A stretch of DNA of 64,000 bases from Selaginella moellendorffii (Eukaryota > Plantae > Lycopodiophyta), in assembly GCF_000143415.4 (NCBI RefSeq), contig NW_003314281.1:1589882-1653881 (forward strand), in the 5' to 3' direction. Under the pieces are notes generated by a model that was not told the DNA's origin, searched no databases, and worked only from the letters and a program-made list of their open reading frames with translations. Of the stretch, positions 15,421 through 64,000 are shown piece after piece. Position 1 is the stretch's first letter. Each line of letters opens with the position of its first letter. Both the position numbers and the translations under genes were made by a program.

Positions 15421-17906
15421 TTTATGTATTTTTCTAGACGCTCATTCATCAATCGCTTCATGCTCATTCCTTGAACACTTTGTTTGGAGTTCCACTCCTG
15501 CTCTTGACTTTCTAAATTGAAACTTTTGGTCCAAACGTGTTATGCTAGTTGGACTTCCATTTTGATTACTACCATATGGCACATTTTCGGCCCACTTTAG
15601 GCCTTAGGGATTTGTGTTTCACATTAGTGTTTGAAGTAATTTATAATATTTATTCTTAGATGTTTCTTTGTCATTAGATTCATACTTGTACACATGAGGT
15701 GTTTCAGTGCACATGCTTGATCTTGATGATATGGATGATCATATGAACCAAAGTCAATTCTATTTACTTGTACAAATAGCATAACATTACATGCAACACA
15801 AGCCTATGGTGAAGGAGCATTCTATTATATCCATTCCTGCTTGTTTGGATATGGAAACAAAAGAAGACTAAATATATTTTTGATTTTATGTTGTTTAATA
15901 GATTATTTTCTTTCTTCCCTCACTATGGGCAGATATGGTGAGATTACTAGCCAATCTATTGGAAAATGAATAAGATGACAAACTTTTTATTCCTACATAA
16001 CTCTTTAGTAGTTGCTTTGGTGTGTGTGCTTGGGTATTGGCATCTAACCACAAGGCATAGCAAGACTTGGCAAATCATTTATACGCAATAGCAACTTTGT
16101 GTTATAACTGGTTTATAGGGTATACTTTTGCTATACATTTTTGTGTTGTTTTTATCTTTATACTAGCTATTTCATCCCTACCAATCCATGAGAGGTGTCA
16201 ATGAACTATTCTTGCTGCATTTGCAAGAGGTTGAACAAGAAACTTTGAGGACTTTGGCTTCTGCAAGGATTGTAACAATAATATGAATTATTTCAGATTA
16301 CTCTATGTATATAGCATTTTTCATGTTGTTGATGGTTCTAAACACAAGGCACTATAAAATATTGCCATATTAACCAGGCTTATAGCCTCCCTCCAAGTCC
16401 AAAGAAATGTTTAAATCATGTTAGTTGCCTCTTACTATTAGGATATTTGAGGAACTTGCTCCACTTCAGGGATGCTCCCGTCTTTCAAGCCAAGCACTCA
16501 ATAGAATGTTTGTGATTATTCCTTGGGAACTCACTCAGGTATTCATTGTTATATTTTTTTCTTGCCTTTAGAATAACCCTATTTGTGTCTTCCACTCTAT
16601 TGTGGCAACACTACAGTGTAGGTTGATTCTAGTGCTACTGTGGTGGCTCCATAAGGAAGGTGGGTGGTAGGAGGTGGTCCCTCTTTCTTTCTTTTCACTG
16701 TTTTAATAAGAGGGATATGTATGATTGTGAGCCACCTTGGTTAGAGGCCATATACTATGCCATCACAATATTGGAGCACAACTCTATATCTAATATATAC
16801 CACCATGTCTGTTTTTAATTAGATTGGGTTGGATAATGTTTTTGAGCTTACAGTGCTATTTAGATTGCACTATCTCCAAATTAGCTTTTGAACATTTGGA
16901 CCAACTTTTCTGGTTAGGTCTGCAAAAATCTAATGGCCTCCTTCATTTATGGTAGTTACTTCTACCGAGTACAGATCACTCTTGAGCTCATGAGTTGAGC
17001 TCAAATTTCAAATGTAGTTCAATACAAACATTACAAAGTTTAAAAAATTAACATTCAACCTAACATCTTTTTGCATTTTATATAAATAAAAATATTTTGG
17101 TAGAGATTTCTTATCCAAGAATTTAATTATTTACTACAAGCTAAAATAGGTAGGTTCTTTAGAATTTTAAATAAGATAGGATTTAAATTTGTGCTTTTTA
17201 AAATTATCAAGATTGAATTAAGATTCTCTAGCAACTATGAGACACATGAATATTATGGGTATATTGCAAAGAGAAAACTTGTGTATATATATATAAAACG
17301 AAAACTAATTATATAAAATACAAAAGCTTATATTATCGATGAAGAATGAACATAATCTCCAAGAGTCTTCTTCAACTCAATAATAATAAGGGTTGGTTAA
17401 TGTATATAAACATCCACTTTAGGATCCTGGTGCAAGATGTTAATGGATATCTAGTACATATGCTTGCAAAAAGCATATGCCTTCCCATGTTCCTCCTTCG
17501 TAAAGTTTAGACATGTGTATAATAATCTTGAATGGCAATTATGTACTTTCGACCTTTTGTTTTTACAATATACTCCTTCATTAACTCAATAATGTACTTT
17601 ATGAAAAGAATTTCACATTAAAGCATTTGAGTGAAGTTTATTTTACCTTCCTTCTGCTTAGAGATTATACTAATAAATTCACCTTTTCTTACTAACCTCT
17701 TGTGCATCTTTATGGGAACAATGCTAGTTCTATCATTTATATCTTCAATTTTCCTCTTCTCAAGATTAAAATCAGATTCCTTAAGGTTTTGAATTTCATC
17801 TGAACTGAATGCAACCTCTTTAACACCTGGCCATTCTTATCAACTCTTGTTTCTCTCATCTATACCACAGCTTTGAAAAGATGGTACCTTTATTATAGTG
17901 TTTACA

Positions 17907-20333
17907 TTAAGCTAAGTTGCTGGGGGGTGGCAAGACTTGACTGCTGCTGTGGGATTGCCTGTGCAGTAAAATCCAGCTTTGAATGATCTCCATCTTCTTG
18001 GAACTTGTAGAACATGCTGATGACCATCTGGATTTTGCTGGTGAACACCACTGCAGGATAACACCACAGAGAAAGCCCAAGATGAAGAATGTATCAGTGT
18101 TGGTGGCATGTACTGGGATGTTGGTCGAGGAATTAGATGTCGAAGCATTGCATGCTGAGAGTGGGAATCCACACAAGAGAGTGTTGCCTGTAAAGGCATC
18201 CAGAAACCTGGTGTTGAGGTTGTTGCCAGTAGGAATAGGACCACTGAGATTGTTGTAGGCAACGCTGAAACTGGCATGAACGCAATCTCCTGCAGAATGC
18301 CACCCTCGAAGTTGTGCGACAGGTCAAGTGATTCCAGCACCTTAAGCATGGAGAGTCCAACTGGGATGCGTCCAGAGAATCTGTTGCTCGAGATGTTGAG
18401 CTGCATGAGACCCACAAGCCGAGAAAGTGTGAGGAGGAGCTCACCTTCGAGCTCGTTGTTTGAGAAGTCCATGAGCGTGAACGAATCAACGAGGTTTGAT
18501 ATGTTGGTATATACTCCTCGCAGGGTGATCCCGTAGTCAAACATGCCACCGCCAAAGGTATACACCCAGGAGACTTGCTTGATGGTCTTGTCACTCGCAA
18601 ACAACAATATCCTAGGCATGCATCGCCAACCTCACCAATCTTCAAGTGATTGATCTCTCCAGCAACCACCTTACTGGTGCTTTGCCCGACCAGCTCGATC
18701 TCATGCAAGGTTTCAAAGCCACCAATGTGAGCGTAAAAGCATTGGGAATGATCTCCACCACTTGCAAACTATCTCTGGAAACATGCCCTGGAAGTTCATT
18801 CACAGGTCTAGCACTTGGATCCCAGTGCAAAGTGGCTAGTCATGCTGCCGAGTTTGGCTTGAGACTTGCACCGCGTTTGGACTGTATGGGAGAGGGCCAG
18901 TGAGTTGGTTCTGCCCAAGTTGCAAGGCCACTAGGTGTTTAGTGGCTCCAAAGCCCATGGTCACCTCACCAAGCACATATCTCCTACATTGAGGATGAGA
19001 AGCTTTTTGAAACTGTCCATCGTCTTTGGAAGCTTGACAGGTCCAGCAGCGTTATGGAAGAGCAGCGTCCAAGCTCCGAAGGAATGACACCGGAGAGATG
19101 GTTACTGGAAAGGTCAAGCCTCGTGAGCTTTGACAAGTTGCCAATGCCTGGAGGAACTTTGCCAGAGAGCTCGTTGTAAGAGAGATCGAGTCGCCGCATC
19201 GACGAACCTGGGGAGTAGTCTTCCCTCAAGGCTCCTGAGAACCTGTTCCATGAAGGTCCAAAGTATTCAGCTTCTCCAGTGAGCCGACCTGTGGAAACAA
19301 AGGCCCAGTCAAGTTGTTCTTGAGACGATCATGGATGTTAAGTTCCGGAGCTTTGCCATTCCACTCGGTAGGCCTCCTTGTAGATTGTTAACGGATAGAT
19401 CCACCAGGGACAGGCAGTCCACCAAAGGTTCCGGAATTACTGTGGACAAGTTGTTGCGGGACATGTCGATTGCTTCAAGAGCGCAGTCATCCCCACCAAA
19501 GATCTCAGGTGGGATCGATGTCAGCTGGTTTTAGCCAGACGTAACACGTTCACAATTTTAAGAAACTTCGATGCGTGAGAAGGGAGAGCAGCAATTGCTC
19601 AAGCTTCTGAGGCAGTGTTCCACAGATCCTCGGGAAGCAGCGGCGGCAACAAGTATCCGGGGATGCGCCGCAGGGTTCTTCGGCCCAGGAATCGCGAGGT
19701 GGAGCTGGACGAGGCCTGCATGTAGGAATTTTCAGCCAGAGAGAGATTTTGCAGCCTGGAAAGCTGACCCAGGGACTCCGGAATGCGGTCACCAAGCTGG
19801 TTTCTCGAGAGATCAATGACTTTGAGAGACGAGCAATTTGCCAGGCTCGAGGAATCTCCTGGTTGTAATAGTTCCAGGGAAGGATGGCGTAGACGTTGAA
19901 GCCGTCCCAAGAAGCCTGGAATCCGGCCCTGGAAGAGATTGTAGGAGAGATCTAACACCTCAAGGAGAGAACAGTTTGTGATCTCGCTGGGAATCTCACC
20001 GGACATGTAATAGTTACGTGACAAGTTGAGCTCTCTGAGCTGTGTCGAGGGCGATATACTTCCCTGCAAGAGGAGAGATGTAAGCCTGATCGAGACGACG
20101 CTGGTGGAAGAATCGCATGAGATTCCTGCCCAAACACACATGTTGGCAACATTGCCCGGGTTCCAGTCAAGAAGAGTGCCTTGTGTGTCGTTTATACCCT
20201 TCTTGAACTCGAGAAGAACATCCGCCTCGTTCTTGGAGGAGGATCCCAGCATTTGCGAGAGGCCTAGAGCAAAGAACAACCAAAAGACGATCTCCACTTT
20301 CTCCATTTTCTGTTGCTCTTGTTCTTCCTGCAT
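17907..20333 (-). pseudogene. LRR receptor-like protein pseudogene, copy 1
   Basis: Mirror image of 39496-41922. A frameshifted and deleted paralog of 50713-53586 that retains the GNxxLCG cap and a partly deleted TM segment in sense orientation. Confidence 0.92.
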
Positions 20334-39495: not shown

Positions 39496-41922
39496 ATGCA
39501 GGAAGAACAAGAGCAACAGAAAATGGAGAAAGTGGAGATCGTCTTTTGGTTGTTCTTTGCTCTAGGCCTCTCGCAAATGCTGGGATCCTCCTCCAAGAAC
39601 GAGGCGGATGTTCTTCTCGAGTTCAAGAAGGGTATAAACGACACACAAGGCACTCTTCTTGACTGGAACCCGGGCAATGTTGCCAACATGTGTGTTTGGG
39701 CAGGAATCTCATGCGATTCTTCCACCAGCGTCGTCTCGATCAGGCTTACATCTCTCCTCTTGCAGGGAAGTATATCGCCCTCGACACAGCTCAGAGAGCT
39801 CAACTTGTCACGTAACTATTACATGTCCGGTGAGATTCCCAGCGAGATCACAAACTGTTCTCTCCTTGAGGTGTTAGATCTCTCCTACAATCTCTTCCAG
39901 GGCCGGATTCCAGGCTTCTTGGGACGGCTTCAACGTCTACGCCATCCTTCCCTGGAACTATTACAACCAGGAGATTCCTCGAGCCTGGCAAATTGCTCGT
40001 CTCTCAAAGTCATTGATCTCTCGAGAAACCAGCTTGGTGACCGCATTCCGGAGTCCCTGGGTCAGCTTTCCAGGCTGCAAAATCTCTCTCTGGCTGAAAA
40101 TTCCTACATGCAGGCCTCGTCCAGCTCCACCTCGCGATTCCTGGGCCGAAGAACCCTGCGGCGCATCCCCGGATACTTGTTGCCGCCGCTGCTTCCCGAG
40201 GATCTGTGGAACACTGCCTCAGAAGCTTGAGCAATTGCTGCTCTCCCTTCTCACGCATCGAAGTTTCTTAAAATTGTGAACGTGTTACGTCTGGCTAAAA
40301 CCAGCTGACATCGATCCCACCTGAGATCTTTGGTGGGGATGACTGCGCTCTTGAAGCAATCGACATGTCCCGCAACAACTTGTCCACAGTAATTCCGGAA
40401 CCTTTGGTGGACTGCCTGTCCCTGGTGGATCTATCCGTTAACAATCTACAAGGAGGCCTACCGAGTGGAATGGCAAAGCTCCGGAACTTAACATCCATGA
40501 TCGTCTCAAGAACAACTTGACTGGGCCTTTGTTTCCACAGGTCGGCTCACTGGAGAAGCTGAATACTTTGGACCTTCATGGAACAGGTTCTCAGGAGCCT
40601 TGAGGGAAGACTACTCCCCAGGTTCGTCGATGCGGCGACTCGATCTCTCTTACAACGAGCTCTCTGGCAAAGTTCCTCCAGGCATTGGCAACTTGTCAAA
40701 GCTCACGAGGCTTGACCTTTCCAGTAACCATCTCTCCGGTGTCATTCCTTCGGAGCTTGGACGCTGCTCTTCCATAACGCTGCTGGACCTGTCAAGCTTC
40801 CAAAGACGATGGACAGTTTCAAAAAGCTTCTCATCCTCAATGTAGGAGATATGTGCTTGGTGAGGTGACCATGGGCTTTGGAGCCACTAAACACCTAGTG
40901 GCCTTGCAACTTGGGCAGAACCAACTCACTGGCCCTCTCCCATACAGTCCAAACGCGGTGCAAGTCTCAAGCCAAACTCGGCAGCATGACTAGCCACTTT
41001 GCACTGGGATCCAAGTGCTAGACCTGTGAATGAACTTCCAGGGCATGTTTCCAGAGATAGTTTGCAAGTGGTGGAGATCATTCCCAATGCTTTTACGCTC
41101 ACATTGGTGGCTTTGAAACCTTGCATGAGATCGAGCTGGTCGGGCAAAGCACCAGTAAGGTGGTTGCTGGAGAGATCAATCACTTGAAGATTGGTGAGGT
41201 TGGCGATGCATGCCTAGGATATTGTTGTTTGCGAGTGACAAGACCATCAAGCAAGTCTCCTGGGTGTATACCTTTGGCGGTGGCATGTTTGACTACGGGA
41301 TCACCCTGCGAGGAGTATATACCAACATATCAAACCTCGTTGATTCGTTCACGCTCATGGACTTCTCAAACAACGAGCTCGAAGGTGAGCTCCTCCTCAC
41401 ACTTTCTCGGCTTGTGGGTCTCATGCAGCTCAACATCTCGAGCAACAGATTCTCTGGACGCATCCCAGTTGGACTCTCCATGCTTAAGGTGCTGGAATCA
41501 CTTGACCTGTCGCACAACTTCGAGGGTGGCATTCTGCAGGAGATTGCGTTCATGCCAGTTTCAGCGTTGCCTACAACAATCTCAGTGGTCCTATTCCTAC
41601 TGGCAACAACCTCAACACCAGGTTTCTGGATGCCTTTACAGGCAACACTCTCTTGTGTGGATTCCCACTCTCAGCATGCAATGCTTCGACATCTAATTCC
41701 TCGACCAACATCCCAGTACATGCCACCAACACTGATACATTCTTCATCTTGGGCTTTCTCTGTGGTGTTATCCTGCAGTGGTGTTCACCAGCAAAATCCA
41801 GATGGTCATCAGCATGTTCTACAAGTTCCAAGAAGATGGAGATCATTCAAAGCTGGATTTTACTGCACAGGCAATCCCACAGCAGCAGTCAAGTCTTGCC
41901 ACCCCCCAGCAACTTAGCTTAA
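39496..41922 (+). pseudogene. LRR receptor-like protein pseudogene, copy 2
   Basis: Colinear with 50713-53586 but with frameshifts, a ~408-bp deletion, a ~94-bp foreign insert and a 182-bp inversion. Confidence 0.92.
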
Positions 41923-44900
41923 TGTAAACACTATAATAAAGGTACCACCTTTTCAAAGCTGTGGTATAGATGAGAGAAACAAGAGTTGATAAGAATGGCC
42001 AGGTGTTAAAGAGGTTGCATTCAGTTCAGATGAAATTCAAAACCTTAAGGAATCTGATTTTAATCTTGAGAAGAGGAAAATTGAAGATATAAATGATAGA
42101 ACTAGCATTGTTCCCATAAAGATGCACAAGAGGTTAGTAAGAAAAGGTGAATTTATTAGTATAATCTCTAAGCAGAAGGAAGGTAAAATAAACTTCACTC
42201 AAATGCTTTAATGTGAAATTCTTTTCATAAAGTACATTATTGAGTTAATGAAGGAGTATATTGTAAAAACAAAAGGTCGAAAGTACATAATTGCCATTCA
42301 AGATTATTATACACATGTCTAAACTTTACGAAGGAGGAACATGGGAAGGCATATGCTTTTTGCAAGCATATGTACTAGATATCCATTAACATCTTGCACC
42401 AGGATCCTAAAGTGGATGTTTATATACATTAACCAACCCTTATTATTATTGAGTTGAAGAAGACTCTTGGAGATTATGTTCATTCTTCATCGATAATATA
42501 AGCTTTTGTATTTTATATAATTAGTTTTCGTTTTATATATATATACACAAGTTTTCTCTTTGCAATATACCCATAATATTCATGTGTCTCATAGTTGCTA
42601 GAGAATCTTAATTCAATCTTGATAATTTTAAAAAGCACAAATTTAAATCCTATCTTATTTAAAATTCTAAAGAACCTACCTATTTTAGCTTGTAGTAAAT
42701 AATTAAATTCTTGGATAAGAAATCTCTACCAAAATATTTTTATTTATATAAAATGCAAAAAGATGTTAGGTTGAATGTTAATTTTTTAAACTTTGTAATG
42801 TTTGTATTGAACTACATTTGAAATTTGAGCTCAACTCATGAGCTCAAGAGTGATCTGTACTCGGTAGAAGTAACTACCATAAATGAAGGAGGCCATTAGA
42901 TTTTTGCAGACCTAACCAGAAAAGTTGGTCCAAATGTTCAAAAGCTAATTTGGAGATAGTGCAATCTAAATAGCACTGTAAGCTCAAAAACATTATCCAA
43001 CCCAATCTAATTAAAAACAGACATGGTGGTATATATTAGATATAGAGTTGTGCTCCAATATTGTGATGGCATAGTATATGGCCTCTAACCAAGGTGGCTC
43101 ACAATCATACATATCCCTCTTATTAAAACAGTGAAAAGAAAGAAAGAGGGACCACCTCCTACCACCCACCTTCCTTATGGAGCCACCACAGTAGCACTAG
43201 AATCAACCTACACTGTAGTGTTGCCACAATAGAGTGGAAGACACAAATAGGGTTATTCTAAAGGCAAGAAAAAAATATAACAATGAATACCTGAGTGAGT
43301 TCCCAAGGAATAATCACAAACATTCTATTGAGTGCTTGGCTTGAAAGACGGGAGCATCCCTGAAGTGGAGCAAGTTCCTCAAATATCCTAATAGTAAGAG
43401 GCAACTAACATGATTTAAACATTTCTTTGGACTTGGAGGGAGGCTATAAGCCTGGTTAATATGGCAATATTTTATAGTGCCTTGTGTTTAGAACCATCAA
43501 CAACATGAAAAATGCTATATACATAGAGTAATCTGAAATAATTCATATTATTGTTACAATCCTTGCAGAAGCCAAAGTCCTCAAAGTTTCTTGTTCAACC
43601 TCTTGCAAATGCAGCAAGAATAGTTCATTGACACCTCTCATGGATTGGTAGGGATGAAATAGCTAGTATAAAGATAAAAACAACACAAAAATGTATAGCA
43701 AAAGTATACCCTATAAACCAGTTATAACACAAAGTTGCTATTGCGTATAAATGATTTGCCAAGTCTTGCTATGCCTTGTGGTTAGATGCCAATACCCAAG
43801 CACACACACCAAAGCAACTACTAAAGAGTTATGTAGGAATAAAAAGTTTGTCATCTTATTCATTTTCCAATAGATTGGCTAGTAATCTCACCATATCTGC
43901 CCATAGTGAGGGAAGAAAGAAAATAATCTATTAAACAACATAAAATCAAAAATATATTTAGTCTTCTTTTGTTTCCATATCCAAACAAGCAGGAATGGAT
44001 ATAATAGAATGCTCCTTCACCATAGGCTTGTGTTGCATGTAATGTTATGCTATTTGTACAAGTAAATAGAATTGACTTTGGTTCATATGATCATCCATAT
44101 CATCAAGATCAAGCATGTGCACTGAAACACCTCATGTGTACAAGTATGAATCTAATGACAAAGAAACATCTAAGAATAAATATTATAAATTACTTCAAAC
44201 ACTAATGTGAAACACAAATCCCTAAGGCCTAAAGTGGGCCGAAAATGTGCCATATGGTAGTAATCAAAATGGAAGTCCAACTAGCATAACACGTTTGGAC
44301 CAAAAGTTTCAATTTAGAAAGTCAAGAGCAGGAGTGGAACTCCAAACAAAGTGTTCAAGGAATGAGCATGAAGCGATTGATGAATGAGCGTCTAGAAAAA
44401 TACATAAAAAGGACTAACACATGGCAAATGTCATGACATATGGAAGTGTCAAAATGGAGTCTGAGATAGAGTCGGATATAGAGTCCAAGATGGAGTCTAT
44501 GATGAACTCAAAATGGAGTTCAAGATGGAGTCCAAAATAGAGTCCAATAAGGACTCTAAGATGGACCCAAGATAGAGTTCGAGATGGACCAAAGATGGAA
44601 TTTAAGATGAATTTGAGATGGATTGAGACCAAGACCAAGATTGAGACTAAAGTTGACTCTAAGTCTAAGACCAAGACTGAGGCTAAGTCCGAGTCTGAGT
44701 CTAAGTGTAAGTCCGAGTTTGAGTCTAAGTCCGAGTCCGAGTCTGAGTTCGAGGATGAAAGCATAAAGCGATTGTCTCCCAAACCCTTAGGGGTTTGGTG
44801 AGCTCCAAAAGTATAATAGGGGAGGACTCTAGTGGAGCCAATTTGGCTAGGAAAGGCCAATGTGACCAAGGAAGGCTATACCCATGTGTTGGATGATGAT

Positions 44901-48300: not shown

Positions 48301-50712
48301 TTAATTGCTTACAACTAACATCACCTATTGCAAAATCTCCCAAGAATATCCTTAAAGGCACATTTCTTCTCGAGTGCAAAAATAGCTCGGCCTATCTCTT
48401 TCACTGTATACAGACAAAATACCTCTAGCAAGATTTGCATGGCTGTGATTGAATGGTGTCAATAGCCAAGGAACACTAAGTGAAAAACCTCTAAGTTATA
48501 GAGCTATCAACTATCCTGTCCTGGTAAAGAAAGAGTAGCACACTCATTAGTTGTTCCTAATGTGGTATAGAGAATAGTAGTTCTAGGAATGAACCTAGAA
48601 AATCAGATCCACTAATCAAGCATATAAAGCTTGTAACTAATAGCATTTAGAAGTTATATGTAATTCCTAATGAAAATAGCAACTTCCTCAACATTAGCCA
48701 TTTGTAAGTTCTTGAATTTGAACTTCCTAAGAAGTCACCCAACTTAGTATTTTCAAACCCAAGAATGTTTAACCCCAAATATCCCAAAACCCTTAACCAA
48801 TTGGAAAAGGAAGTGCATTTTTGTTCATGGGCCCTTTCCCTTTATATTTTAATCCTTATGGATCATTTCTCAAGTCATTCCCTTTAATTAATTACAATCC
48901 ACCATGCTCCACCAAGCAATATTCAAAGCTAGCAAGTTTGTAGCAAAAACATCATCCACCATGCTTTGGGATTTCCTAATAAATGGTGGTAGATGATTGT
49001 TATTGCAATCTTCTACATGGATGTTGACCAATAGTGATCAAAAGGACATACACTATATTTAAAATTGGCTAGGCAAAATAAAGGTAGTTACTAAAATAGA
49101 CAATTAACTTCATAATTAACTATATTACTTATATAGAAATCTACATTTTGAATATCTTAAGTGAAACCAAAGGAAACCACTCCAATGCTTATGACAACAA
49201 CATTTCACAAACTCCAACATGGTGAGAAGGTTTGAGATTAAGATTTCATCATATGTTGCATAACACCAAATGTTGGCATAGTTGTAAACCTGTTTTCAGA
49301 CACAAAGAACTCCCACCAGGCATGTCAGAATAACAAAAGATAAGTGATGGTAATGGAGGAGGAGGACATAGTTGCCTACATAAAAAAATCAAGTTCAAGA
49401 TATGTCACTATCGACAGTAGGAGGAAAATGAAAACAACCTGAAATGAGTCATGGAATTGACAATGAAGAAAGAATTGTAGACTTGTTAGAGGACTCTAAG
49501 TAGATAAGGTTCACAATTATTATGTAGTATCGATTATAGTAATATATAACAGTTTGTGTATTAATATTAAATTTAACTTAACTAAAGTAGTTTAATCCAA
49601 TTCAACTATCAGTACCAAAATAAAAAGAAAGAACTGACAAAGTTACTTAAAAAAAAAAACTACATATCTAAGAACTGCTAGTGAAAAAAAAATGATAAAT
49701 AGGACGAACATAAAATTTAATAATTAACTTTACAGTATAGATAAAAGAACTATTTGGCCCCCAATAGAAGCTTACAGATGTTGTTAACACATATCCAATC
49801 GCACACTTGCTATTTGAAAGGAAATTCTAGATTATAGAGGAAACAAAAACACACACTTAGTACATTAGATTATTCAGATTTCACTCACTTCCACTATCAT
49901 CAAATACTTTAGGACTTTACTCCATGCCATTTTTCTTGGGATGAAAAGCATATAGTAGTGCCACAACCTCTTCACCTTCAAAATCAGATGAAATGTCAAT
50001 GATAGGCAGTGGACTGTTGGCATTTATATGCCATATTTCTTCAATGGATGGTTTAAACTCCAAATTCATTTGTGCACTAGGCTAATGAAGTTGGCAATCC
50101 ACAGCATAATTGGGTGAATCTAGGCACTAAAATGCCTCACCTACCTTAGGAGGATTTGACTCCACATTTTGATGCTCATTACCATCCATTTGTGAAGAGA
50201 CTTTTGATGAAGTGTTGGTTCTTGATTTGGAAGAAATAGATCCCTAGGTGAAAACATTAGAAGCTTTTATAAATGGAGCAAAAGGCTATTCAACACTAGG
50301 AGGAGAAAAAGTCCAACCAGACATTGCCAAAGAAATTACACAAGACTTTTGATCTATACACTATAGTGGCCACTAACAATTAAGCCCTCTTTATGTACTA
50401 AGGTGTATATAAATAAATGAAGTTTCAAACCCATCAATGGATAGTTAAACAACTAAACATAAAATAGTTACAAGACAAGTAGATCTACAAAAATAAGACA
50501 ATTAGATCTATAAAAATAAGACAAGTAAACTATACTTTTAGCCTGGAGACTCACATGTGTGCAATAAAGAATTGACAGGCTACATTTCAAACTACACACG
50601 GTAGTACAGGTTGACAAGGCTTCTGTATAAGCTGACTAGTGAAATTAAAATGAATATACTCTAAATATTCACTGACGTGGCAAGTTGCACACCCCTGTTC
50701 TTTAGAAGTCAG

Positions 50713-53274
50713 ATGCAGAAAGAACAAGAGCAACAGAAAATGGAGAAAGTGGAGATCGTCTTTTGGTTGTTATTTGCTCTAGGCCTCTCACAAATGCTGG
50801 GATCCTCCTCCAAAAACGAGGCGGATGTTCTTCTCGAGTTCAAGAAGGGTATAAACGACACAGAAGGCAATCTTCTTGACTGGAACCCGGGCAATGTTGC
50901 CAACATGTGTGCTTGGGCAGGAATCTCATGCGATTCTTCCACCAGCGTCGTCTCGATCAGGCTTACATCTCTTCTCTTACAGGGAAGTATATTGCCCTCG
51001 ATTGGCCAGCTAACACAGCTCAGAGAGCTCAACTTGTCACGGAACTACTACATGTCCGGTGAGATTCCCAGCGAGATCACAAACTGTTCTCTCCTTGAGG
51101 TGCTAGATCTCTCCTACAATCTCTTCCAGGGCCGGATTCCGGGCTTCTTGGGACGCCTTCAACGTCTACGTCATCTTTCCCTGCGGTGGAACTATTACAA
51201 CCAGGAGATTCTCTCGAGCTTGGCAAATTGCTCGTCTCTCGAAGTCATTGATCTCTCGAGAAACCAGCTTGGTGGCCGCATTCCGGAGTCCCTGGGTCAG
51301 CTTTCCAGGCTGCAAAATCTCTCTCTGGCTGACAATTCCTACATGCATGGAACACTGCCTCGAAGCTTGGGCAATTGCTCGTCTTTGGTTGGTCTCAGGC
51401 TTCGAAACAACAAGTTCACTGGAAAGATACCAGTCGATCTATTCAAGCTACCAGTGCTCTTGACCCTTGGCATTTCGATGAACGAGTTTACTGGTATTGA
51501 ATCTGGTGGCTACGCCTCAAGCAGCATTGTGGAGCTAAACTTGACCTCCAACAGTTTCAACACCTCCATGGACAGCATACTAAAAGGAATCCAGCAAATG
51601 AAGCACCTTCAAATTCTGGCTCTTGGTGGCTTCCCACAGCAATTGTCTGGTGAGATCCCTGCTAGTCTTCTTTCTTTGAAATCACTTCAAAGTTTGGACC
51701 TCCAGAATAACAGTTATAGCTCCATTCCTTTGGACTTTGCCTACGGCAACCTGGGGTATTTAGACATCAGGTTCAACAAGTTCGCTGCTCTCCCTTCTCA
51801 CGCATCGAAGTTTCTTAAAACTGTGAACGTGTTACGTCTGGCAAGAAACCAGCTCACATCAATCCCACCTGAGATCTTTGGTGGGGATGACTGCGCTCTT
51901 GAAGCGATCGACATGTCCCGCAACAACTTGTCCACAGGAATTCCTGAAACTTTGGTGGATTGCCTGTCCCTACAGAGCGTGGATCTATCCGTTAACAATC
52001 TACAAGGTGGCCTACCGAGTGGAATGGCAAAGCTCCGGAACTTAACATCCATGACCGTCTTCAGGAACAACTTGACTGGGCCTTTGTTTCCACAGGTCGG
52101 CTCACTGGAGAAGCTGAATACTTTGGACCTTTCATGGAACAGGTTCTCAGGAGCCTTGTGGGAAGACTACTCCCCAGGTTCGTCGATGCGGCGACTTGAT
52201 CTCTCTTACAACGAGCTCTCTGGCCAAGTTTCTCCAGGCATTGGCAACTTGACAAAGCTCACGAGGCTTGATCTTTCCAATAACCATCTCTCCGGTGTCA
52301 TTCCTTCGGAGCTTGGACGCTGCTCTTCTATAACGCTGCTGGACTTGTCAAGAAATGAACTGAATGGTAACCTTCCAAAGGCGATGGACAATTTCACAGA
52401 GCTTCTCATCCTCAATGTAGGAGATAATATGCTAACTGGTGAGGTGACCATGGACTTTGGAGCCACTAAACACCTAGTGGCCTTGCAACTTGGGCAGAAC
52501 CAATTCAGCGGCCCTCTCCCATACAGCTTGAGCAACATCTCCTTGCAAATGCACCAGGTGCAAGTCTCAAGCCAAACTCGGCAGCATGACTTCTATCTGC
52601 AGCCACTTTGCACTGGGATCCAAGCGCTAGACCTGCGAATGAACAACTTCCAGGGCATGTTTCCAGAGATAGTTTGCAAGTGGACGTGCTTGATGGTCTT
52701 GTCACTCGCAAACAACAATATCCGGGGCACCATCCCACCATGCATCGCCAACCTCACCAATCTTCAAGTGATTGATCTCTCCAGCAACCACCTCACTGGT
52801 GCTTTGCCCGACCAGCTCGATCTCATGCAAGGTTTCAAAGCCACAAATGTGAGTGTAAAAGCATTGGGAATGATCTCCAAGTCTCCCGAGTGGTACAGCT
52901 TTGGCGGGGGCGTGTTTGGCTACGGGATCACCCTGCGAGGAGCATATGTCACCATATCAAACCTCATCGATTCCTTCACGCTCATGGACTTCTCAAACAA
53001 CGAACTCGAAGGTGAGCTGCCCCTCACACTTTCTGGGCTCGTGGGTCTCATGCAGCTCAACATCTCGAGCAACCGATTCTCTGGACGCATCCCAGTTGGA
53101 CTCTCCAGGCTTAAGGTGCTGGAATCACTTGACCTGTCGCACAACAACTTCGAGGGTGGCATTCCGCAGGAGATTGCGTTCATGCCCGAGCTGTCCAGTT
53201 TCAGCGTTGCCTACAACAATCTCAGTGGTCCTATTCCTACTGGCAACAACCTCAACACCAAAATCCAGCTTTGA
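50713..53274 (+). CDS. LRR receptor-like protein, intronless, 853 aa; truncated before the TM domain (predicted secreted)
   Basis: First ATG is 50713 (alternative 50740). Signal peptide, LRRNT cap (LLEFKKG...W...C.W.GI.C), many plant-specific LRRs (LxLSxNxLxGxIP), an island domain and final LRRs. It ends GPIPTGNNLNTKIQL*. Confidence 0.9.
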   Translation: MQKEQEQQKMEKVEIVFWLLFALGLSQMLGSSSKNEADVLLEFKKGINDTEGNLLDWNPGNVANMCAWAGISCDSSTSVVSIRLTSLLLQGSILPSIGQLTQLRELNLSRNYYMSGEIPSEITNCSLLEVLDLSYNLFQGRIPGFLGRLQRLRHLSLRWNYYNQEILSSLANCSSLEVIDLSRNQLGGRIPESLGQLSRLQNLSLADNSYMHGTLPRSLGNCSSLVGLRLRNNKFTGKIPVDLFKLPVLLTLGISMNEFTGIESGGYASSSIVELNLTSNSFNTSMDSILKGIQQMKHLQILALGGFPQQLSGEIPASLLSLKSLQSLDLQNNSYSSIPLDFAYGNLGYLDIRFNKFAALPSHASKFLKTVNVLRLARNQLTSIPPEIFGGDDCALEAIDMSRNNLSTGIPETLVDCLSLQSVDLSVNNLQGGLPSGMAKLRNLTSMTVFRNNLTGPLFPQVGSLEKLNTLDLSWNRFSGALWEDYSPGSSMRRLDLSYNELSGQVSPGIGNLTKLTRLDLSNNHLSGVIPSELGRCSSITLLDLSRNELNGNLPKAMDNFTELLILNVGDNMLTGEVTMDFGATKHLVALQLGQNQFSGPLPYSLSNISLQMHQVQVSSQTRQHDFYLQPLCTGIQALDLRMNNFQGMFPEIVCKWTCLMVLSLANNNIRGTIPPCIANLTNLQVIDLSSNHLTGALPDQLDLMQGFKATNVSVKALGMISKSPEWYSFGGGVFGYGITLRGAYVTISNLIDSFTLMDFSNNELEGELPLTLSGLVGLMQLNISSNRFSGRIPVGLSRLKVLESLDLSHNNFEGGIPQEIAFMPELSSFSVAYNNLSGPIPTGNNLNTKIQL

Positions 53275-53519
53275 ATGATTGCCATCTTCTTGGAACTTGT
53301 TGAACTTATTGATGATCATCTGGATTTTGCTGGTGAACACCACTACATAGAACGCCACCACAAAGGGCGGGATAGCACCACAAAGAAAGCCCAAGACGAA
53401 GGTATCAGTGTTGGTGGCATGTACTGGGATGTTGGTCGAGGAATTAGATGTCGAAGCATTGCATGCCGAGAGTGGGAATCCACACAAGAGAGTGTTGCCT
53501 GTGAAGGCATCCAGAAACC
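53261..53519 (-). other. 259-bp inversion containing the C-cap, juxtamembrane and TM coding sequence of the LRR-RLP
   Basis: The minus strand reads RFLDAFTGNTLLCGFPLSAC...TFVLGFLCGAIPPFVVAFYVVVFTSK. The paralog has this in sense orientation at 41621-41860. Confidence 0.95.
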
Positions 53520-53684
53520 TACTGCACAGGCAATCCCACAACAGTCGAGTCTTGCCACCCCCCAGCAACTTAGCTTCAGCAGCTAATGTAAAAACGAAAG
53601 TAAGGCACCAGCTTTTCAAAGCTGTGGTGCGATTTCAAGAGAAACAAGAGTTGATAAGAATTGTGGACGAATAAAGGTATTTGA

Positions 53685-55319
53685 TTATAGCAAGCTAGAC
53701 ACTTGATCGCTGTTATCTTCCACTCCCAGGTAGTAGAGGCACAACAAAGCCCCAGAGCACAGAACAAACACAAGCGCCAGCCTCTCGAGCGTGAGATCGG
53801 TCTTGCTGCTGTCCAGCTGAGAGGCGCTCGTGATCTGGTACCAGGGCGATGCCACCGCTCCAAACAAGATGCCCACCAGCGCGCCACCGACGTGAGTCCA
53901 GGCATCCACCGGGAGCTCGTTCCCCACCAGCACGGTCAGCCCGCTAAGCACCAGGACCTTTTGCAAGAGCTCGCCGGTGTCAAACGTTCGCACGGCCTCC
54001 TTGTTCTTGACGAGGAAGATGATCCAGCTGCAGATCATGGCAAACACCGCGCCGGTTCCTCCCACTGTTGGCTGCGACGTCTGGAGAAAGCTCGCCACGT
54101 TGCCCATGGCACCGCCCAGGAGGTAAATCAGGACGAGTCCTATGGAGCCGTAGAGGCTCTCCACAAGTGGGCCAAAGGATATCGTCGCCCAGCAGCTGAG
54201 GAAGAGGTGCAACAGGCCCGAGTGCTGCGAGAAAGGGAGACACACACGGTTTGAGTTGATCTGAAGTCGAGTGGAAGAGCTCATACCAGGAAAGTTGGAG
54301 TTATCAGCCTCCACCATTCTCCGGCGACAATGAGATCGTTCACTTTTGCTCCTTGCAAGAATGCCAGATCCATGCCGTTTTCTGTTTGCTGGGTCGTCGC
54401 AAGGCCGAAAATATAGACACCAATGTTTATCCCCACAATGGTCGACCTGGAGAAAAAAAATCAGAAAAAAAAAAAAACCAGAGAGAAAACGCAAACTTTG
54501 ACTTACACCACAATGGATCCCCGTCGCATGAGGAGCAAAGGCACTTCTTTGTTGGCCTCATCGCTGGTGGTATTCAGCACGACCAGAGGAGTTTCTTCAT
54601 TGTTGGGATCCAACTCAAACTCACTCCCACGATCTTCTTTCACTGCTGCGGCTGCCGATGCTTCCTCCTTCTCTTTGGATTCGGCTTGCTCAAACTCCTT
54701 GAGTACTGTCAGGAGCAGCTCCTCCTTCAAAGCGTACTCGTCCTGTAGTGACTTCAACTTATCAGTACCTGCCTTCATAAAAACTCGTCAACTAAACCCT
54801 CGCCCAGCACAAACAGAAAAAAACTACCTAGTGCAAGAGTAAAGACTCACCACTAGCGTGGCTGCGAATTTCTTTCGCTGGATCGTGCTCTTGCTTGTGC
54901 AATCCGCCAGACTCCACGGAAATCACCGCTGCTTCGCGTAAAGAACTTAAAGGCTTCTCCTCCTCCTCCCGGGAAGTCGTGCTCGATTTCTTCTTCTTCG
55001 TCTCAAGCATGTCAAAGTATGAATCCAGGGTCTTCAATGCACTCTTAACAGCCGACGAACTCTCCCCTTTCTTCTCATCATCATCGCTCTCGCCCGCCGA
55101 CGACGAGCTGGCGCTGCCCGAGCCCTCGCATTTCAAGCGCCGGCAGAAGCGCTGCGGCCTCAGCGCCGATCCCCTGTGCCCGATGCTACTCAGCAGCAGC
55201 GATCTGTGCGACACCGAAAACCCTTGCTGGATCGCCGCCACAGACATGAGCTCCGAGCAGAACTCCATCGCGCAAGACTCACCAATCGATCGAAATCCGC
55301 CTCCTCTCCCCATCGCCAT
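53685..55319 (-). CDS. Rhomboid-like protein of the RBL9 type (probably plastid, probably inactive); exons 55319-54851, 54768-54507, 54446-54287, 54224-53685; 476 aa
   Basis: The GT-AG spliced product gives GAKVNDLIVAGEWWRLITPTFLHSGLLHL, PTVGGTGAVF and WTHVGG, with a transit-peptide-like N-terminus. Exon phases are compatible. Confidence 0.9.
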
Positions 55320-55495
55320 AGCCAGAGCTCGCTAGAACCCTAAAATATTTAAGCCAAGGGTGAAAAGAACAAACAAAAGAATTAATAGTAGTAAAAATGA
55401 GCAAGGACAAAAAGAAGGGAAAATTTACTTTTTACAACCATTGGCTCTTCGTGATTTTTTTTTTCTTCTCTCTCTTGTCTCGAGGACGAGGATCA

Positions 55496-58400
55496 TCACA
55501 AGCCGGGCCTGCTTCTCCTCATCCTCTTTCTTCGCGCCGCAGGACCCCAGCTTCGTCTCGACCACTCCTCAAATTCGTCGCTCTCCTTCCCCATGATCTC
55601 CTCGGACGAATTCTCGCCAGAGTTTTGCTGCTGCTGCTGCTGGCTCAGTCGATCCAGGGACTCCTGCTCGGACGTCGAATTGTTGCTGCCGTAGTTCGAG
55701 GACGCGGAGGAGATCCTTTTGGTCTCGTGATGAGGATGAGCGTGGCCTCCTCCATCTCGGTGATCCCGTGGCTTCGAGGACGAATTCACGGCCTTGGTGA
55801 TGTTGGTGGTGGAGGAGAGATCTCTGGCTGCTCCGGCTGATGATTTGGAGCTCCTGGATGATGGAGTGTGATGTTGGTGTTGTTGGTGATGGTTTTGCTG
55901 CTGCTGCTGCTGCTGCTGCTTCTTGGTTACCAGTTTCTTCTTGATCTTGGACGAGGACTTTGGAGCTTCGGTCGCCGCTCCACCATTTCCACCACCGCCA
56001 CCACCTCCACCACCTTCGCATTGTGTCAGAGCCACCTTGACGGATTTGAACGAGGCCTTCGGTGGATCCTCCGCAGCAACCACACTCTCCTGGAACTTGG
56101 CTACTATCGTCTTGCTGTTCTTGCTCTTCTTCTTCTTCTTCTTCTTCTTGCTCTCGTCCTTCACAGGCTCCGCTACCGCTGGCGATGGCTTTGGAGGGGC
56201 GGCGGCGGCGGCAGCCGGAGGAGCGGCATGGTTTGCCACACCTGTAGGCAGCGTTTCGATGAGCCGCCTCTTGGATTTGTGATGCAGGCGGAGCACTCCA
56301 CTGTCGCCGTTCTTCTCCGGCTGGACGTGATCTCGCTTCGCGGGAGCCAGGCTGACGAGGATCTCCGCCGCCAAGTTGGCACCGTCGTCCGGATTGTCCG
56401 CAAGGAACGAGTAGCCATTGCTCCCCGCCTTATCCTTGTCCTTATCCTTCTCCTTGTGACGGCTCACGGACGGCGAAGCTTTCAGCGTGGAGCTCTCCTT
56501 CTCCTTGAGACCCTGGTGGCTCGAGTGAGACTTGGAAGACGACGACGATTTCAAGCTCTTGGGATTCACCAGATGCTTCCTCTTCTTCTTCTCGCCCTCC
56601 CCATCCCTGGACAGCTCCCCTGTCCGCGAATCTAGCTCCTCGGCAATGGCGTCAGGCCGCTTCTTCCCGTTAGTAGTAGCGTTGTCAGATTCCCTTGTTG
56701 CCAACAAGTCTTTGGAACTCACCAGCTTGAATCGCCGCTTCTTGCTGCTCGTAGGTGGCGCCGCCGGCGGCTCAGCACTGTCTCGAACTTCTTCCCTGGC
56801 CTTGTGGTGCTGCTGCTGCTGCTGCTGCTCTGAAGAGCTTCTAACCGCAACCTTCTCGATCTTCCCGGACCGCTGCTTCACCTGTACATCCTCCACGCTA
56901 CCGGTGTCACAAATCGGACATCCTGGCTGCGAGCAACTACAGCTTGGAGCCTCCTCACACCTTCCCAAATCAGTCTCGTCCCTGGAGCCACCTCTTCTCT
57001 CTTGCAACACTTCATCCCTTTCCACTACTTGGGCATCCTGTTTGATCGCCTTGACCACGTCCAGCAGACCGGAATTGGGCTTGTCGCTCGAGCTCAAGCC
57101 CAATCCCCCCGGAGGATTCAGATCCAAGCCTTTCGGCTTGCTCTCGTCCTTGGGCTCGCCAGCCTCGAGCTTTGCAACCTCGCTCCCATTCACTGGGCTC
57201 TCCGTACTGTCCCCTCTCTTCCGCTGATCTGTTGCTACCACTAAAGCTGCCGCTGCTGTCTCGTCACCGTGTTGACGCAACAAGCCCACAACCGGTGGTC
57301 CGTCTCTGTCCAGCGGAGCCAGCTTAAGCTCCATGGTCGCTCCATCGAGTATGAGCTTGGGAGGTTTCTTAAACGGCGGTTTCGGAGGCGTTGAAGCCGA
57401 GTAAAGAAAACCCGGCGAGGGAGCAGTGCTCGCATTACTGCTCGCCCCTTTCAACCAGCAGCCACTCCCCCCACCACTCTCCTCTTTGTTGTTGTTGCTC
57501 GCATAGCTCGCCGGAGGAGGAGCAGCCGGAGGAGGAGGAGGAGGAACCACCCCGAGCACCGCCGCGTGATGGTGTTGCTGCTGATGCGAGCTCGGACTCG
57601 GACTCGTGGTCGCAAAGCCCGAGCCACCTTGCCACGCAACTTGGACAGACTGCGCAGGTGTCCCCGCCTGTAACACGGCCACTTGCTGGTACTGTGGCTG
57701 CTGCGGCTGGTGGTAATAGTTGGAGTTTGATTTCCACCACAGTCCCAGGCCGCCGGGAGAAGCCTCCATGAAAGCCGACGACGACGACGACGACGACGAC
57801 GGTGGCGGCACTGGCTCCCTTCTCGCCATGTTGGTGGACGGGATCAGAATTCCCTGGCTCGAGTAGCTCACGTGATTTTGCAGGCCACCCAGCGAAGCAC
57901 CGAAAAACTTTCCATTGTCCTCCGCAGACGGACCCCGTTCCATGGCTGCTGCTGCCGCGGACGCGAAGAACGGGTTCAAGTTCTCGATGCCGGAGGACGA
58001 TGATGAAGATCCTCCCAGTCCTTTCCCGTTCTCGGCTGCGAACCGGTTGTTGGGGCCCGGCTCCAAAAACACAACATGCTGATTCTCCGCTGCCTTTGAA
58101 TTCGTGGAAAGAACTTCCTGCTGCTGCTGCTGCTGCTGCTGCTGTGGCTTGGATACCTGCACGAGGAGAATAAAAACAAATGGAGAAGGAGCACAAAAAA
58201 AAAAAGGAAAGAGAAACAAAGACCCGAGTTAGCAAAGTAGAAGGAATCAAATTGTGATTAGATAGGAGGCACCACTACCTTATCGCTTGCGGCGAGGTGA
58301 AATCCATTGGGCGGAGCTCTGCTCTTCTCCACAGCCGCCGCCGCAGCATTCCTTAATGCTTGAGCTCCTCCAGTGTTGTCAAAGCCGTACCCCCAGATCC

Positions 58401-59093
58401 CACCCAGAATCCCTTGGGTCACACACGGAAGAACCTGCTGCTGCTGCTGCTTAAATCCTCCACCTCCACCTCCACCTCCTCCATCCGAGCCCGAGCTCTT
58501 GGCACGCTTTATCATCTGGAAGATCTCACTCTCTCCGTCTCGGCCGCTGTTCCAGCCGATCTGCTGCTGCGAGCCCACTTTCTCATGAACAGCCGCTGAC
58601 GAATCCAGATTCTTCACACTGTTCATGGCTGGAGCTGGAGCAGCAGTGGCAGCAGTGGCAGCCGCGGCAGCGCTCAGCCTTGACACCAAATCACAAGCGG
58701 CGCTGCTGTTATTGTTGTTGTTGGCAGTGGTGGTGGTGGTGGTGGCGTTGCTGCTGGGCTCCTCCATCTCCACATCCATGTACTCCTCGGCTGGCAGCTC
58801 CAAGTCGAAAGTCCTCCGCCGGGGCTTGGCATCACTCTTTTTGCCGCTGCAATCGTAGCCAGATGCCAATTCCAGCCTCGAGCTGTCGATCGCGCGAGGC
58901 GGCCGGAGGTCTTGGAGCAGCAGCTTCTGGACACGATAGACCCTGTGGAGCTCCTGGACCTGCGCAAGGAGACGAACACCATCCATGAGAACATCTCGCC
59001 TCACTTTGCGCAAAATGGATAGATCTGACTGACCTGTTGGCGGAACTGGGCCTCCTGCTCGAGGATAATCTTCCTGACCATCTCCATTTCCAT
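55496..59093 (-). CDS. DUF863-family protein; exons 59093-59034, 58959-58279, 58156-55496 (start uncertain)
   Basis: Spliced VRKIILEQEAQFRQQ|VQELHRVYRVQK, FDLELPAEEY, GLDLN (EAR-like), AAEILVSL and C-terminal WGPAARRKRMRR match recalled DUF863 blocks. Contains poly-Q/G/S tracts. Confidence 0.8.
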
Positions 59094-63634: not shown

Positions 63635-63966
<332 letters not shown>

Positions 63967-64000
63967 CTGATGCGCAAAAGGATGAAGAAACGACCAAAAG

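What the first reader, a model, noticed from the sequence alone, without database searches (positions are those of the whole stretch)
50713..53586. A precise 259-bp inversion converts a membrane LRR receptor into a predicted secreted LRR protein
Seen: the 853-aa ORF is open from signal peptide to last LRR, then stops at NLNTKIQL*. Bases 53261-53519 are the reverse complement of the C-cap and TM coding region. The paralog reads CTCAACACCA-GGTTTCTGG...AGCTGGATTT-TACTGCACAG (41611-41870), whereas this gene reads CTCAACACCA-AAATCCAGCT...CCAGAAACC-TACTGCACAG. No bases are lost at either junction. Flipping the segment back restores an uninterrupted 957-aa RLP ending at 53586. Known: soluble extracellular LRR proteins (PGIP-like proteins, decoys) act in plant defence. 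Inference: this is either a very recent knockout or the birth of a secreted decoy or inhibitor, possibly segregating as anchored and soluble alleles.
Basis: partly seen in the sequence, partly recalled or inferred. Interest (0 to 1): 0.82.

Follow-up and report, generated by a model that had tools for sequence, protein, structure and literature searches.

The report
Small inversion truncates one receptor allele
In the Selaginella moellendorffii reference plant, one of the two copies of a cell-surface immune-type receptor gene carries a clean 259-base flip that removes its membrane anchor, while the other copy is intact; this is most likely a young knockout allele, not a proven new secreted protein.

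Summary
Window 53261-53519 is the exact reverse complement of the C-cap/transmembrane coding segment of an LRR receptor-like protein (RLP) gene. The ORF therefore stops at ...NLNTKIQL* (853 aa).

The window is Selaginella moellendorffii v1.0, scaffold GL377585.1. The 853-aa ORF is already an annotated protein there.

- **Intact allele exists.** I fetched the second-haplotype scaffold of the same assembly (GL377627.1). Its allele has the segment in the ancestral orientation and an open 949-aa RLP with cap, GxxxG transmembrane helix and tail.
- **Clean event.** The 40 bases beside each junction are identical in the two alleles, and no base is lost. The reference plant is therefore heterozygous.
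- **Independent data.** Contigs of four other public runs (three RNA, one DNA) show the intact orientation. Words specific to the inverted junction occur in two further RNA runs. An assembly error is unlikely.
- **Recent.** One run carries a non-inverted haplotype almost identical to the inverted one.

Nothing shows that the truncated product is made, stable or selected. It lacks the C-terminal cap cysteines, and lineage dN/dS is uninformative (5N:5S against 6N:9S). My reading is a young loss-of-function allele; a secreted decoy remains possible.

A second, older in-place inversion sits in the decayed paralog. Other first-stage notes on other DNA of this genome report similar short inversions; these are unchecked.

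The parts
50713..53274 (+). Truncated RLP ORF of the inverted (I) allele. It is 853 aa from the first ATG; the start conserved with the other haplotype is Met10 at 50740. It holds a signal peptide, LRRNT_2, about 24 plant-type LRRs, an island region and four further LRRs, then 4 foreign codons (KIQL) and a stop.
   Evidence: Translation. Pfam LRRNT_2, LRR_1 and LRR_8. Identical to annotated proteins P0121 and P0001 of S. moellendorffii. Motif and hydropathy scan.
53261..53519 (-). The inverted segment (259 bp, or 53260-53520 given the 1-nt ambiguity). Its minus strand encodes the C-terminal LRR cap (CGFPLSAC), the juxtamembrane stretch, the transmembrane helix with a GxxxG motif, and the start of the cytoplasmic tail.
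   Evidence: Reverse-complement match to the paralog and to the allele of the other haplotype. Translation. Opposite-strand joints at exactly these places in four public runs.
53520..53586 (+). Orphaned end of the ancestral coding sequence: the last 21 codons and the stop. In this allele it lies downstream of the new stop.
   Evidence: Translation. Identical to the tail of the intact allele's ORF.
39496..41996 (+). Paralog copy B, a decayed RLP with a broken frame and a 22-bp deletion in the transmembrane region. Its cap/TM segment is in the ancestral orientation. It carries its own older 186-bp in-place inversion at 41072-41257.
   Evidence: Self-BLAST. ORF list. Junction alignments.
17833..20333 (-). 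Paralog copy A, the mirror image of copy B inside a 12.4-kb inverted duplication. It carries the same older inversion at 18572-18757.
51649..51704 (+). Cryptic 56-nt GT..AG intron inside the LRR coding region. It is removed in RNA contigs of runs X1 and X3. Its removal shifts the frame and gives a stop near residue 305.
   Evidence: Joint table. Translation of the spliced form.
53685..55319 (-). Convergent neighbour gene (Rhomboid family). Its 3' end faces the RLP 3' end about 100 bp away, and its transcript may run antisense over the inverted segment.
   Evidence: Called genes of L001. X2 contig record 10 runs uninterrupted from inside this gene to 53242.

Best explanation
This is a real, recent, still-polymorphic micro-inversion in the nuclear genome of Selaginella moellendorffii.

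**Shown**
- The ancestral gene is an intronless LRR receptor-like protein. It has a signal peptide, N-cap, about 24 LRRs, an island, four LRRs, a C-cap, a GxxxG transmembrane helix and a short tail.
- On one haplotype of the sequenced plant, two breaks 259 bp apart were rejoined with the piece flipped, with no base lost or gained.
- The reading frame now runs into the antisense of the tail and stops after four codons. This allele can only encode an 853-aa ectodomain with no C-cap, no membrane anchor and no tail.
- The other haplotype keeps the intact 949-aa gene, so the reference plant is heterozygous.

**Inferred**
- The flipped allele is most likely a young loss-of-function (null or hypomorphic) allele in a fast-turnover RLP cluster. 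In other words, it is the first step of pseudogenisation.
- The neighbouring paralog shows this path at a later stage, with its own older in-place inversion plus deletions and frameshifts.
- The breakage mechanism is unknown. A clean two-break end-joining or a replication template switch both fit. There are no flanking inverted repeats that would allow recombinational flip-flop.
For: **Structure**
- establish the inverted segment and what it encodes.

**Identity of the window**
- It is GCA_000143415.2 scaffold GL377585.1. The 853-aa product is an annotated protein.

**Heterozygosity**
- The allele on scaffold GL377627.1 is collinear on both sides, opposite in the segment, and encodes an open 949-aa RLP.
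- The assembly is known to contain both haplotypes of the sequenced plant (PMC3095285).

**Polarity**
- The paralogs in both haplotypes and the intact allele share one orientation, and only that orientation gives a coding frame.

**Not an assembly artefact**
- Contigs of X1, X2 and X3 (RNA) and X4 (DNA) join 53260 to 53519 and 53261 to 53520 on opposite strands. That is the intact form.
- X14 and X25 hold 3 of 3 sampled words of the 72-nt stretch across the inverted left junction.
- X1 and X2 carry all the non-junction words of that stretch but hold none of the sampled words. The sampled words must therefore span the junction.
- Contigs X2 record 9 and X3 record 15 end exactly at 53260, as expected at a graph branch between two orientations.

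**Recency**
- X1 record 5 is a non-inverted haplotype. Within the segment it differs from the inverted one by one base and the 3-bp indel.

**Loss of function favoured**
- The cap cysteines (residues 853 and 860) and the TM helix (residues 880-905) of the intact allele are missing from the product.
- The inverted segment carries 4 derived changes, including a 3-bp deletion, against 1 on the intact lineage.
- The paralog shows the same kind of lesion at a later stage of decay.
Against: - The truncated ORF is still open for 853 codons.
- The region is transcribed.
- Between the alleles the ectodomain shows 16 synonymous and 16 nonsynonymous differences, roughly dN/dS 0.3. There is no excess of replacements on the inverted lineage (5N:5S against 6N:9S). 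A retained function cannot be excluded.
- Support for the inverted junction outside the reference assembly rests on only three sampled 31-mers in two runs.
- The DNA run X4 shows only the intact form. I therefore have no independent DNA reads of the inverted form.
Confidence: 0.7

Rival explanations
1. Birth of a secreted LRR protein. The inverted allele makes a stable, soluble ectodomain that acts in the apoplast as a ligand sink, decoy or co-receptor modulator. It is kept alongside the anchored allele.
For: - There is an intact signal peptide and an uninterrupted LRR ectodomain of 853 codons.
- Replacement changes are not elevated on the inverted lineage.
- Junction words are present in RNA runs.
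Against: - The product ends immediately after the last LRR and lacks the C-terminal cap cysteine pair. By general knowledge of LRR folds, that pair shields the solenoid end (inference).
- The inversion is too young for dN/dS to carry information.
- The strand of the RNA words is unknown, and they may belong to the antisense Rhomboid 3' UTR.
- Part of the message is spliced to a premature stop.
- There is no protein-level evidence.
Confidence: 0.13
2. Assembly artefact. The 259-bp piece was placed in the wrong orientation in scaffold GL377585.1, and both haplotypes are really intact.
For: - All four runs laid on the stretch show the intact orientation at both junctions, including the 2024 DNA run at about 200x word depth.
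- That DNA run is not among the holders of the inverted-junction words.
Against: - Two RNA runs from two studies hold all three sampled words, which can only come from the inverted left junction.
- Contigs in two runs stop exactly at 53260, as expected at a branch.
- The inverted haplotype has its own derived changes inside the segment, including a 3-bp deletion.
- From my own knowledge, the v1.0 assembly was built from long Sanger reads, which would span a 259-bp piece and both junctions.
- X4 differs from both reference haplotypes at several sites, so it is another genotype.
Confidence: 0.07
3. Reversible switch. The segment flips back and forth, somatically or between generations, toggling anchored and soluble forms.
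For: - Both orientations occur in RNA data of one species.
- A non-inverted haplotype nearly identical to the inverted one exists (X1).
Against: - No inverted repeats flank the segment in either orientation to support recombination.
- The two orientations are tied to different linked variants: a 3-bp indel and SNPs inside the segment and in its flanks.
- No recombinase-type system is known for plant nuclear genes.
Confidence: 0.02

Closest known systems
Plant LRR receptor-like proteins (LRR-RLPs such as Cf-9, EIX1/EIX2, RLP23)
   Same: The ancestral (intact) allele has the full RLP layout: signal peptide, LRRNT_2, plant-type LRRs, an island followed by exactly four LRRs, a C-cap, a GxxxG transmembrane helix, and a short tail with no kinase. 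The best database matches outside Selaginella are named EIX1/EIX2, RLP12 and related LRR kinases, at 27-33% identity.
   Different: It is a lycophyte gene with no one-to-one relation to any characterised angiosperm RLP. The window's allele no longer encodes the cap, helix or tail.
Rice Xa21D (truncated member of the Xa21 receptor family)
   Same: It is a membrane LRR receptor gene turned by a structural mutation into an ORF for the LRR ectodomain alone, with intact relatives still present. Xa21D is the documented case in which such a product keeps partial function (PMC3655273).
   Different: By my recollection of Wang et al. 1998 (not checked here), Xa21D was truncated by a transposon-type insertion. 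Here the cause is a clean 259-bp inversion. Xa21D derives from a receptor kinase, whereas this gene derives from an RLP. Function is shown for Xa21D and not here.
PGIP-type secreted LRR proteins
   Same: Both have a signal peptide plus an extracellular plant-type LRR solenoid without a membrane anchor.
   Different: PGIPs are about 10 LRRs long and keep cysteine-bonded caps at both ends (general knowledge). This product has about 24 LRRs plus an island, lacks the C-cap, and is not related to PGIPs beyond the repeat type.
Micro-inversions (sub-kb in-place inversions) as a class of structural variant
   Same: One segment lies in opposite orientation in two otherwise collinear alleles, with breakpoints resolved to the base.
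   Different: The cases I found for plants are mostly plastid hairpin-associated small inversions. This one is nuclear, coding and heterozygous in a reference individual, and has no flanking inverted repeat.

Membership tests
Plant LRR receptor-like protein (LRR-RLP) | N-terminal signal peptide | tested here: met
   There is a hydrophobic N-terminal stretch (residues 4-22 from Met10, mean Kyte-Doolittle 1.63) followed by small polar residues. This is a simple hydropathy test, not a dedicated predictor.
Plant LRR receptor-like protein (LRR-RLP) | Plant LRR N-terminal cap (LRRNT_2) and a long run of 24-residue extracellular LRRs | tested here: met
   Pfam PF08263 at E 1.8e-9; LRR_1 at 2e-56; LRR_8 at 7e-51. 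There are 23-24 LxxLxLxxNxL matches at 24-residue spacing.
Plant LRR receptor-like protein (LRR-RLP) | Island region interrupting the repeats, followed by four LRRs | tested here: met
   The repeat register breaks between motif starts 675 and 746. Four repeats then follow, at 746, 770, 794 and 818. This rests on motif spacing and inspection only.
Plant LRR receptor-like protein (LRR-RLP) | C-terminal LRR cap with a cysteine pair | tested here: not met
   In the window's allele the cap (LLCGFPLSAC) is encoded on the opposite strand, beyond the stop. It is present in the other haplotype's allele, with Cys 853 and 860.
Plant LRR receptor-like protein (LRR-RLP) | Single transmembrane helix and short cytoplasmic tail, no kinase | tested here: not met
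   The 844/853-aa product has no hydrophobic window after the signal peptide. The intact allele has one at residues 880-905, with a GFLCG (GxxxG) motif, then about 45 residues of tail. The window's allele is therefore a derivative of an RLP gene, not an RLP by architecture.
Secreted LRR defence proteins (PGIP-like) | Soluble LRR domain closed by cysteine caps at both ends | tested here: not met
   The N-cap is present and the C-cap is absent from the product.
Secreted LRR defence proteins (PGIP-like) | Shown secretion and binding or inhibition of a microbial or endogenous ligand | not testable with these tools
   This needs protein expression, apoplast proteomics and binding assays.
Heterozygous or segregating micro-inversion | Two alleles collinear on both sides, with the same segment in opposite orientation and base-level breakpoints | tested here: met
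   Window against L002/L003: 98.66% collinear, 96.2% on the opposite strand over 53260-53520, then 97.9% collinear. The 40 nt beside each junction are identical.
Heterozygous or segregating micro-inversion | Both orientations supported by data independent of the assembly | tested here: inconclusive
   The intact orientation is shown clearly by contigs in 4 runs. The inverted orientation rests on 3 of 3 sampled junction words in 2 RNA runs.

The most novel reading that the evidence does not exclude
Short, base-precise in-place inversions may be a recurrent mutational signature of the Selaginella moellendorffii nuclear genome. Under this reading, the present case is the first caught while still heterozygous and transcribed. 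It would show that the process can re-cut protein architectures in one step, here turning an anchored receptor into a signal-peptide-plus-LRR ORF, as well as shred pseudogenes. Two independent events of 186-259 bp lie in this one RLP cluster. Unchecked first-stage notes on other pieces of the genome describe more.
Probability: 0.3. Interest if true: 0.6.

Novelty: new member of a known kind. Interest (0 to 1): 0.4.

Why it matters
- **A natural allele pair.** It gives a base-resolved pair, membrane-anchored against anchor-less, of one lycophyte cell-surface receptor in the standard laboratory clone. The question of whether an RLP ectodomain does anything once released can be tested without engineering.
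- **An annotation correction.** RefSeq carries the truncated allele as an ordinary 853-aa protein. It models the intact allele as a 558-aa product.
- **A check on assembly quality.** At least one of the many short in-place inversions noted in this genome is shown to be a genuine variant, not an assembly error. That justifies a genome-wide count between the two haplotypes and a look at the repair or replication process behind them.

Tried and rejected
- **Paralog as the inverted copy.** Rejected. The intact allele and all paralog copies share one orientation, and only that orientation is coding.
- **Assembly error.** Largely rejected.
- **Flip-flop by flanking inverted repeats.** None flank the segment. 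I did find a 13-nt inverted repeat (12/13) whose right arm spans the right breakpoint in the ancestral allele, and a 12-nt direct repeat near both breakpoints. A rough estimate gives about a 10% chance that the best repeat touches a breakpoint by luck, so this is only a hint.
- **Lineage-specific dN/dS polarised with the paralog.** Counts are too small to discriminate (5N:5S against 6N:9S, with 7 differences unpolarised).
- **Failed look-ups.** Exact-protein look-ups of P0001 and P0122 found nothing. The RefSeq versions P0121 and P0125 worked.
- **Literature.** Searches for nuclear micro-inversions in Selaginella returned only organelle papers.
- **Allele-specific expression from X1 SNPs.** Abandoned, because X1 carries a third haplotype and de Bruijn contigs can mix alleles.
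- **Not attempted.** I made no structure prediction of the truncated protein, because a model cannot decide stability or secretion. I did not extend the allelic comparison beyond about 14.5 kb to estimate an inversion rate, because the tools give too little allelic DNA.
Full report
**1. The observation**

The ORF 50713-53274 reads without interruption from a signal-peptide-like N-terminus through LRRNT_2 and a long LRR array. It stops at ...NLNTKIQL*.

The reverse complement of 53261-53519 matches the paralog at 41621-41860 (225/262 identities, E 2e-72). In the frame set by the upstream codons it encodes FLDAFTGNTLLCGFPLSAC..., a hydrophobic helix and a basic/acidic tail start. 53521-53586 carries the remaining 21 codons and the stop.

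Because 53260 is A and 53520 is T, the event can be written as 259 or 261 bp.

**2. Where the window comes from**

A protein search with the ORF gave a 98%-identity hit, SELMODRAFT_413431 of Selaginella moellendorffii. It is identical except for a predicted 60-nt intron and a later start, and it ends in KIQL.

Its cluster also holds the 853-aa product, marked as encoded by the window. That product maps to GCA_000143415.2 scaffold GL377585.1, positions 1640594-1643155. A Rhomboid gene and an ELF3-like gene lie downstream on the other strand.

The truncated ORF is therefore already annotated as an ordinary protein. Its origin by inversion is not apparent from any name or paper I found.

**3. The other haplotype**

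The v1.0 assembly contains both haplotypes of the sequenced plant (PMC3095285).

I reached the allelic scaffold GL377627.1 through the ELF3-like neighbour and fetched it as L002 and L003. The gene order (RLP paralog, RLP, Rhomboid, ELF3-like) is the same.

| Window stretch | Match to the other haplotype | Identity |
|---|---|---|
| 50731-53260 | collinear | 98.66% |
| 53260-53520 | opposite strand | 96.2% |
| 53520-63999 | collinear | 97.9% |

The 40 bases on each side of both junctions are identical between the alleles, and the ends of the segment are identical. Nothing was lost or added.

The allele L002:15524-18373(-) is an open 949-aa ORF. It ends with cap, helix and tail (...NLNTRFLDAFTGNTLLCGFPLSAC...FFILGFLCGAIPPFAAAFYVVVF...SFSS*). 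Hydropathy finds its single post-signal helix at residues 880-905 and the cap cysteines at 853 and 860. The window's product has neither.

The sequenced plant is therefore heterozygous for an intact and an inverted allele.

**4. Polarity**

The intact allele, paralog copies A and B in the window, and the paralog of the other haplotype all have the cap/TM segment in one orientation. Only that orientation is coding. The window's orientation is derived.

**5. Artefact or real**

I laid contigs of four public runs on 50600-53900.
- X1, X2 and X3 (RNA) and X4 (DNA, about 200x word depth) all join 53260 to 53519 and 53261 to 53520 on opposite strands. That is the intact form.
- These contigs carry the variants of the other haplotype, or of further haplotypes. 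They do not contradict the window.
- X2 record 9 and X3 record 15 end exactly at 53260. That is what a de Bruijn graph does where two orientations branch.

I then searched the run index with a 72-nt stretch centred on the inverted left junction, 53225-53296.
- Three 31-mers were sampled. RNA runs X14 and X25, from two different studies, hold all three.
- X1 and X2 hold none of them.
- X2 carries the six left-flank words (record 9 reaches 53260).
- X1 carries the right-hand words. Its record 5 matches 53261-53519 with a single difference, at 53457.
- The sampled words must therefore span the junction and be specific to the inverted form.

The inverted haplotype also has private derived changes inside the segment. 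The assembly was built from long Sanger reads (my own knowledge). Taken together, I put the artefact reading at about 7%.

The weak points are the small number of words and that I could not lay X14 or X25.

**6. Age**

Within the segment the two reference alleles differ at 7 bases and one 3-bp indel. Polarised with the paralog:
- 4 events are derived on the inverted lineage (the 3-bp deletion and three substitutions).
- 1 event is derived on the intact lineage.
- 3 fall in a stretch the paralog has deleted.

X1 record 5 is non-inverted, yet it differs from the window's segment by only one base and the 3-bp indel. It has the ancestral 3 bp next to an inverted-lineage base 3 nt away, a combination that a 31-mer graph cannot produce by mixing alleles. 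A close non-inverted relative of the inverted haplotype therefore exists, and the inversion is recent.

**7. Is the truncated product functional?**

The evidence is inconclusive.
- Over 840 shared codons the alleles differ at 32 sites, 16 synonymous and 16 replacement. That is roughly dN/dS 0.3.
- Polarised, the inverted lineage has 5N:5S and the intact lineage 6N:9S. There is no difference, and most changes probably predate the inversion.
- The product would keep all four post-island LRRs but lack the cap cysteines, the helix and the tail.
- RNA contigs of X1 and X3 remove a 56-nt GT..AG piece (51649-51704), which gives a stop near residue 305. X2 keeps that piece. Part of the message is therefore unproductive whichever allele it comes from.
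- X2 record 10 runs unbroken from inside the Rhomboid gene to 53242, at three times the depth of the RLP body. The junction words in RNA may thus belong to the antisense Rhomboid 3' UTR.
- The only precedent I can cite for a functional anchor-less LRR receptor derivative is rice Xa21D (PMC3655273).

I rate a selected secreted function at about 13% and a young null or hypomorphic allele at about 70%.

**8. Mechanism of the inversion**

No inverted repeats flank the segment in either orientation, so homologous flip-flop is unlikely.

In the ancestral allele a 13-nt inverted repeat (12/13, 51-nt loop; L003 19399-19411 and 19463-19475) has its right arm across the right breakpoint. A 12-nt direct repeat (CTKCACAGGCAA) lies 13 nt inside the left breakpoint and 2 nt outside the right one. 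These are hints of a structure-prone site, not proof.

A clean two-break rejoining or a double template switch both fit the 0-1 nt junction homology.

**9. Context**

The focal gene and the paralog differ by a second in-place inversion (focal 52683-52879 against 41072-41257, 18572-18757 and L003 12646-12842). The focal orientation encodes normal LRRs, so the paralog is the derived one.

The paralog also has deletions and a broken frame. All its copies share this inversion, although those copies are only 90-92% alike between haplotypes. It is therefore old.

The window's haplotype holds about 35 kb more DNA than the other between a GH25 gene and the RLP. This includes a 12.4-kb inverted duplication (99.15%) that doubles the paralog and encloses an N gap.

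Other first-stage notes on other pieces of this genome describe short in-place inversions in a kinase, a PPR pseudogene and decaying duplicates. They are unchecked. The older inversion in the decayed paralog here fits the same pattern.

**10. Verdict**

- The secreted-decoy idea remains an untested minority reading.
- By kind, this is another example of a receptor allele truncated by a structural variant. It is unusual in that the variant is a base-perfect 259-bp inversion caught in the heterozygous state.

Noticed in passing
window 14791-27234 and 32597-45037; N gap 31911-32010: A 12.4-kb inverted duplication (99.15% identity) doubles the decayed RLP paralog. Its spacer holds the only assembly gap. 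The other haplotype (L003) has a single paralog copy and about 35 kb less DNA between the GH25 gene and the RLP. This is either a haplotype-specific inverted duplication or a scaffolding problem.
   Followed up: partly
window 41072-41257, 18572-18757; L003 12646-12842 (versus focal 52683-52879): A second, older in-place inversion of about 186-197 bp lies inside the LRR region of the paralog. All paralog copies in both haplotypes share it, and small deletions and frameshifts accompany it.
   Followed up: partly
window 51649-51704 and 51058-51128: There are cryptic GT..AG introns of 56 and 71 nt inside LRR coding sequence, starting at the GGTGAG of 'SGEIP'. The 56-nt one is removed in RNA contigs of X1 and X3 but not X2. 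Either removal causes a frameshift and an early stop.
   Followed up: partly
L002 15524-18214 / L003 16847-19537: The called gene for the intact allele gives a 558-aa product with no Pfam hit on record, although a 949-aa LRR-RLP ORF is open there. The model looks wrong.
   Followed up: partly
window 53242-54692: A single RNA contig of X2 (depth 25.7, against about 7 for the RLP body) runs from inside the convergent Rhomboid gene across the RLP 3' end. Its 3' UTR may overlap the inverted segment in antisense, so the inversion may also alter that UTR on this haplotype.
   Followed up: no
L003 19399-19411 / 19463-19475 and 19222-19233 / 19473-19484: In the ancestral allele a 13-nt inverted repeat spans the right breakpoint, and a 12-nt direct repeat sits next to both breakpoints. 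This may be relevant to how the breaks arose.
   Followed up: partly
window 12026-12603 versus 24222-24381 and 35448-35607: A roughly 160-nt unit is repeated directly at 12025 and 12442. In related repeat copies it appears once, in the opposite orientation relative to its flanks. This is either another in-place inversion or a small element inserted in different orientations.
   Followed up: no
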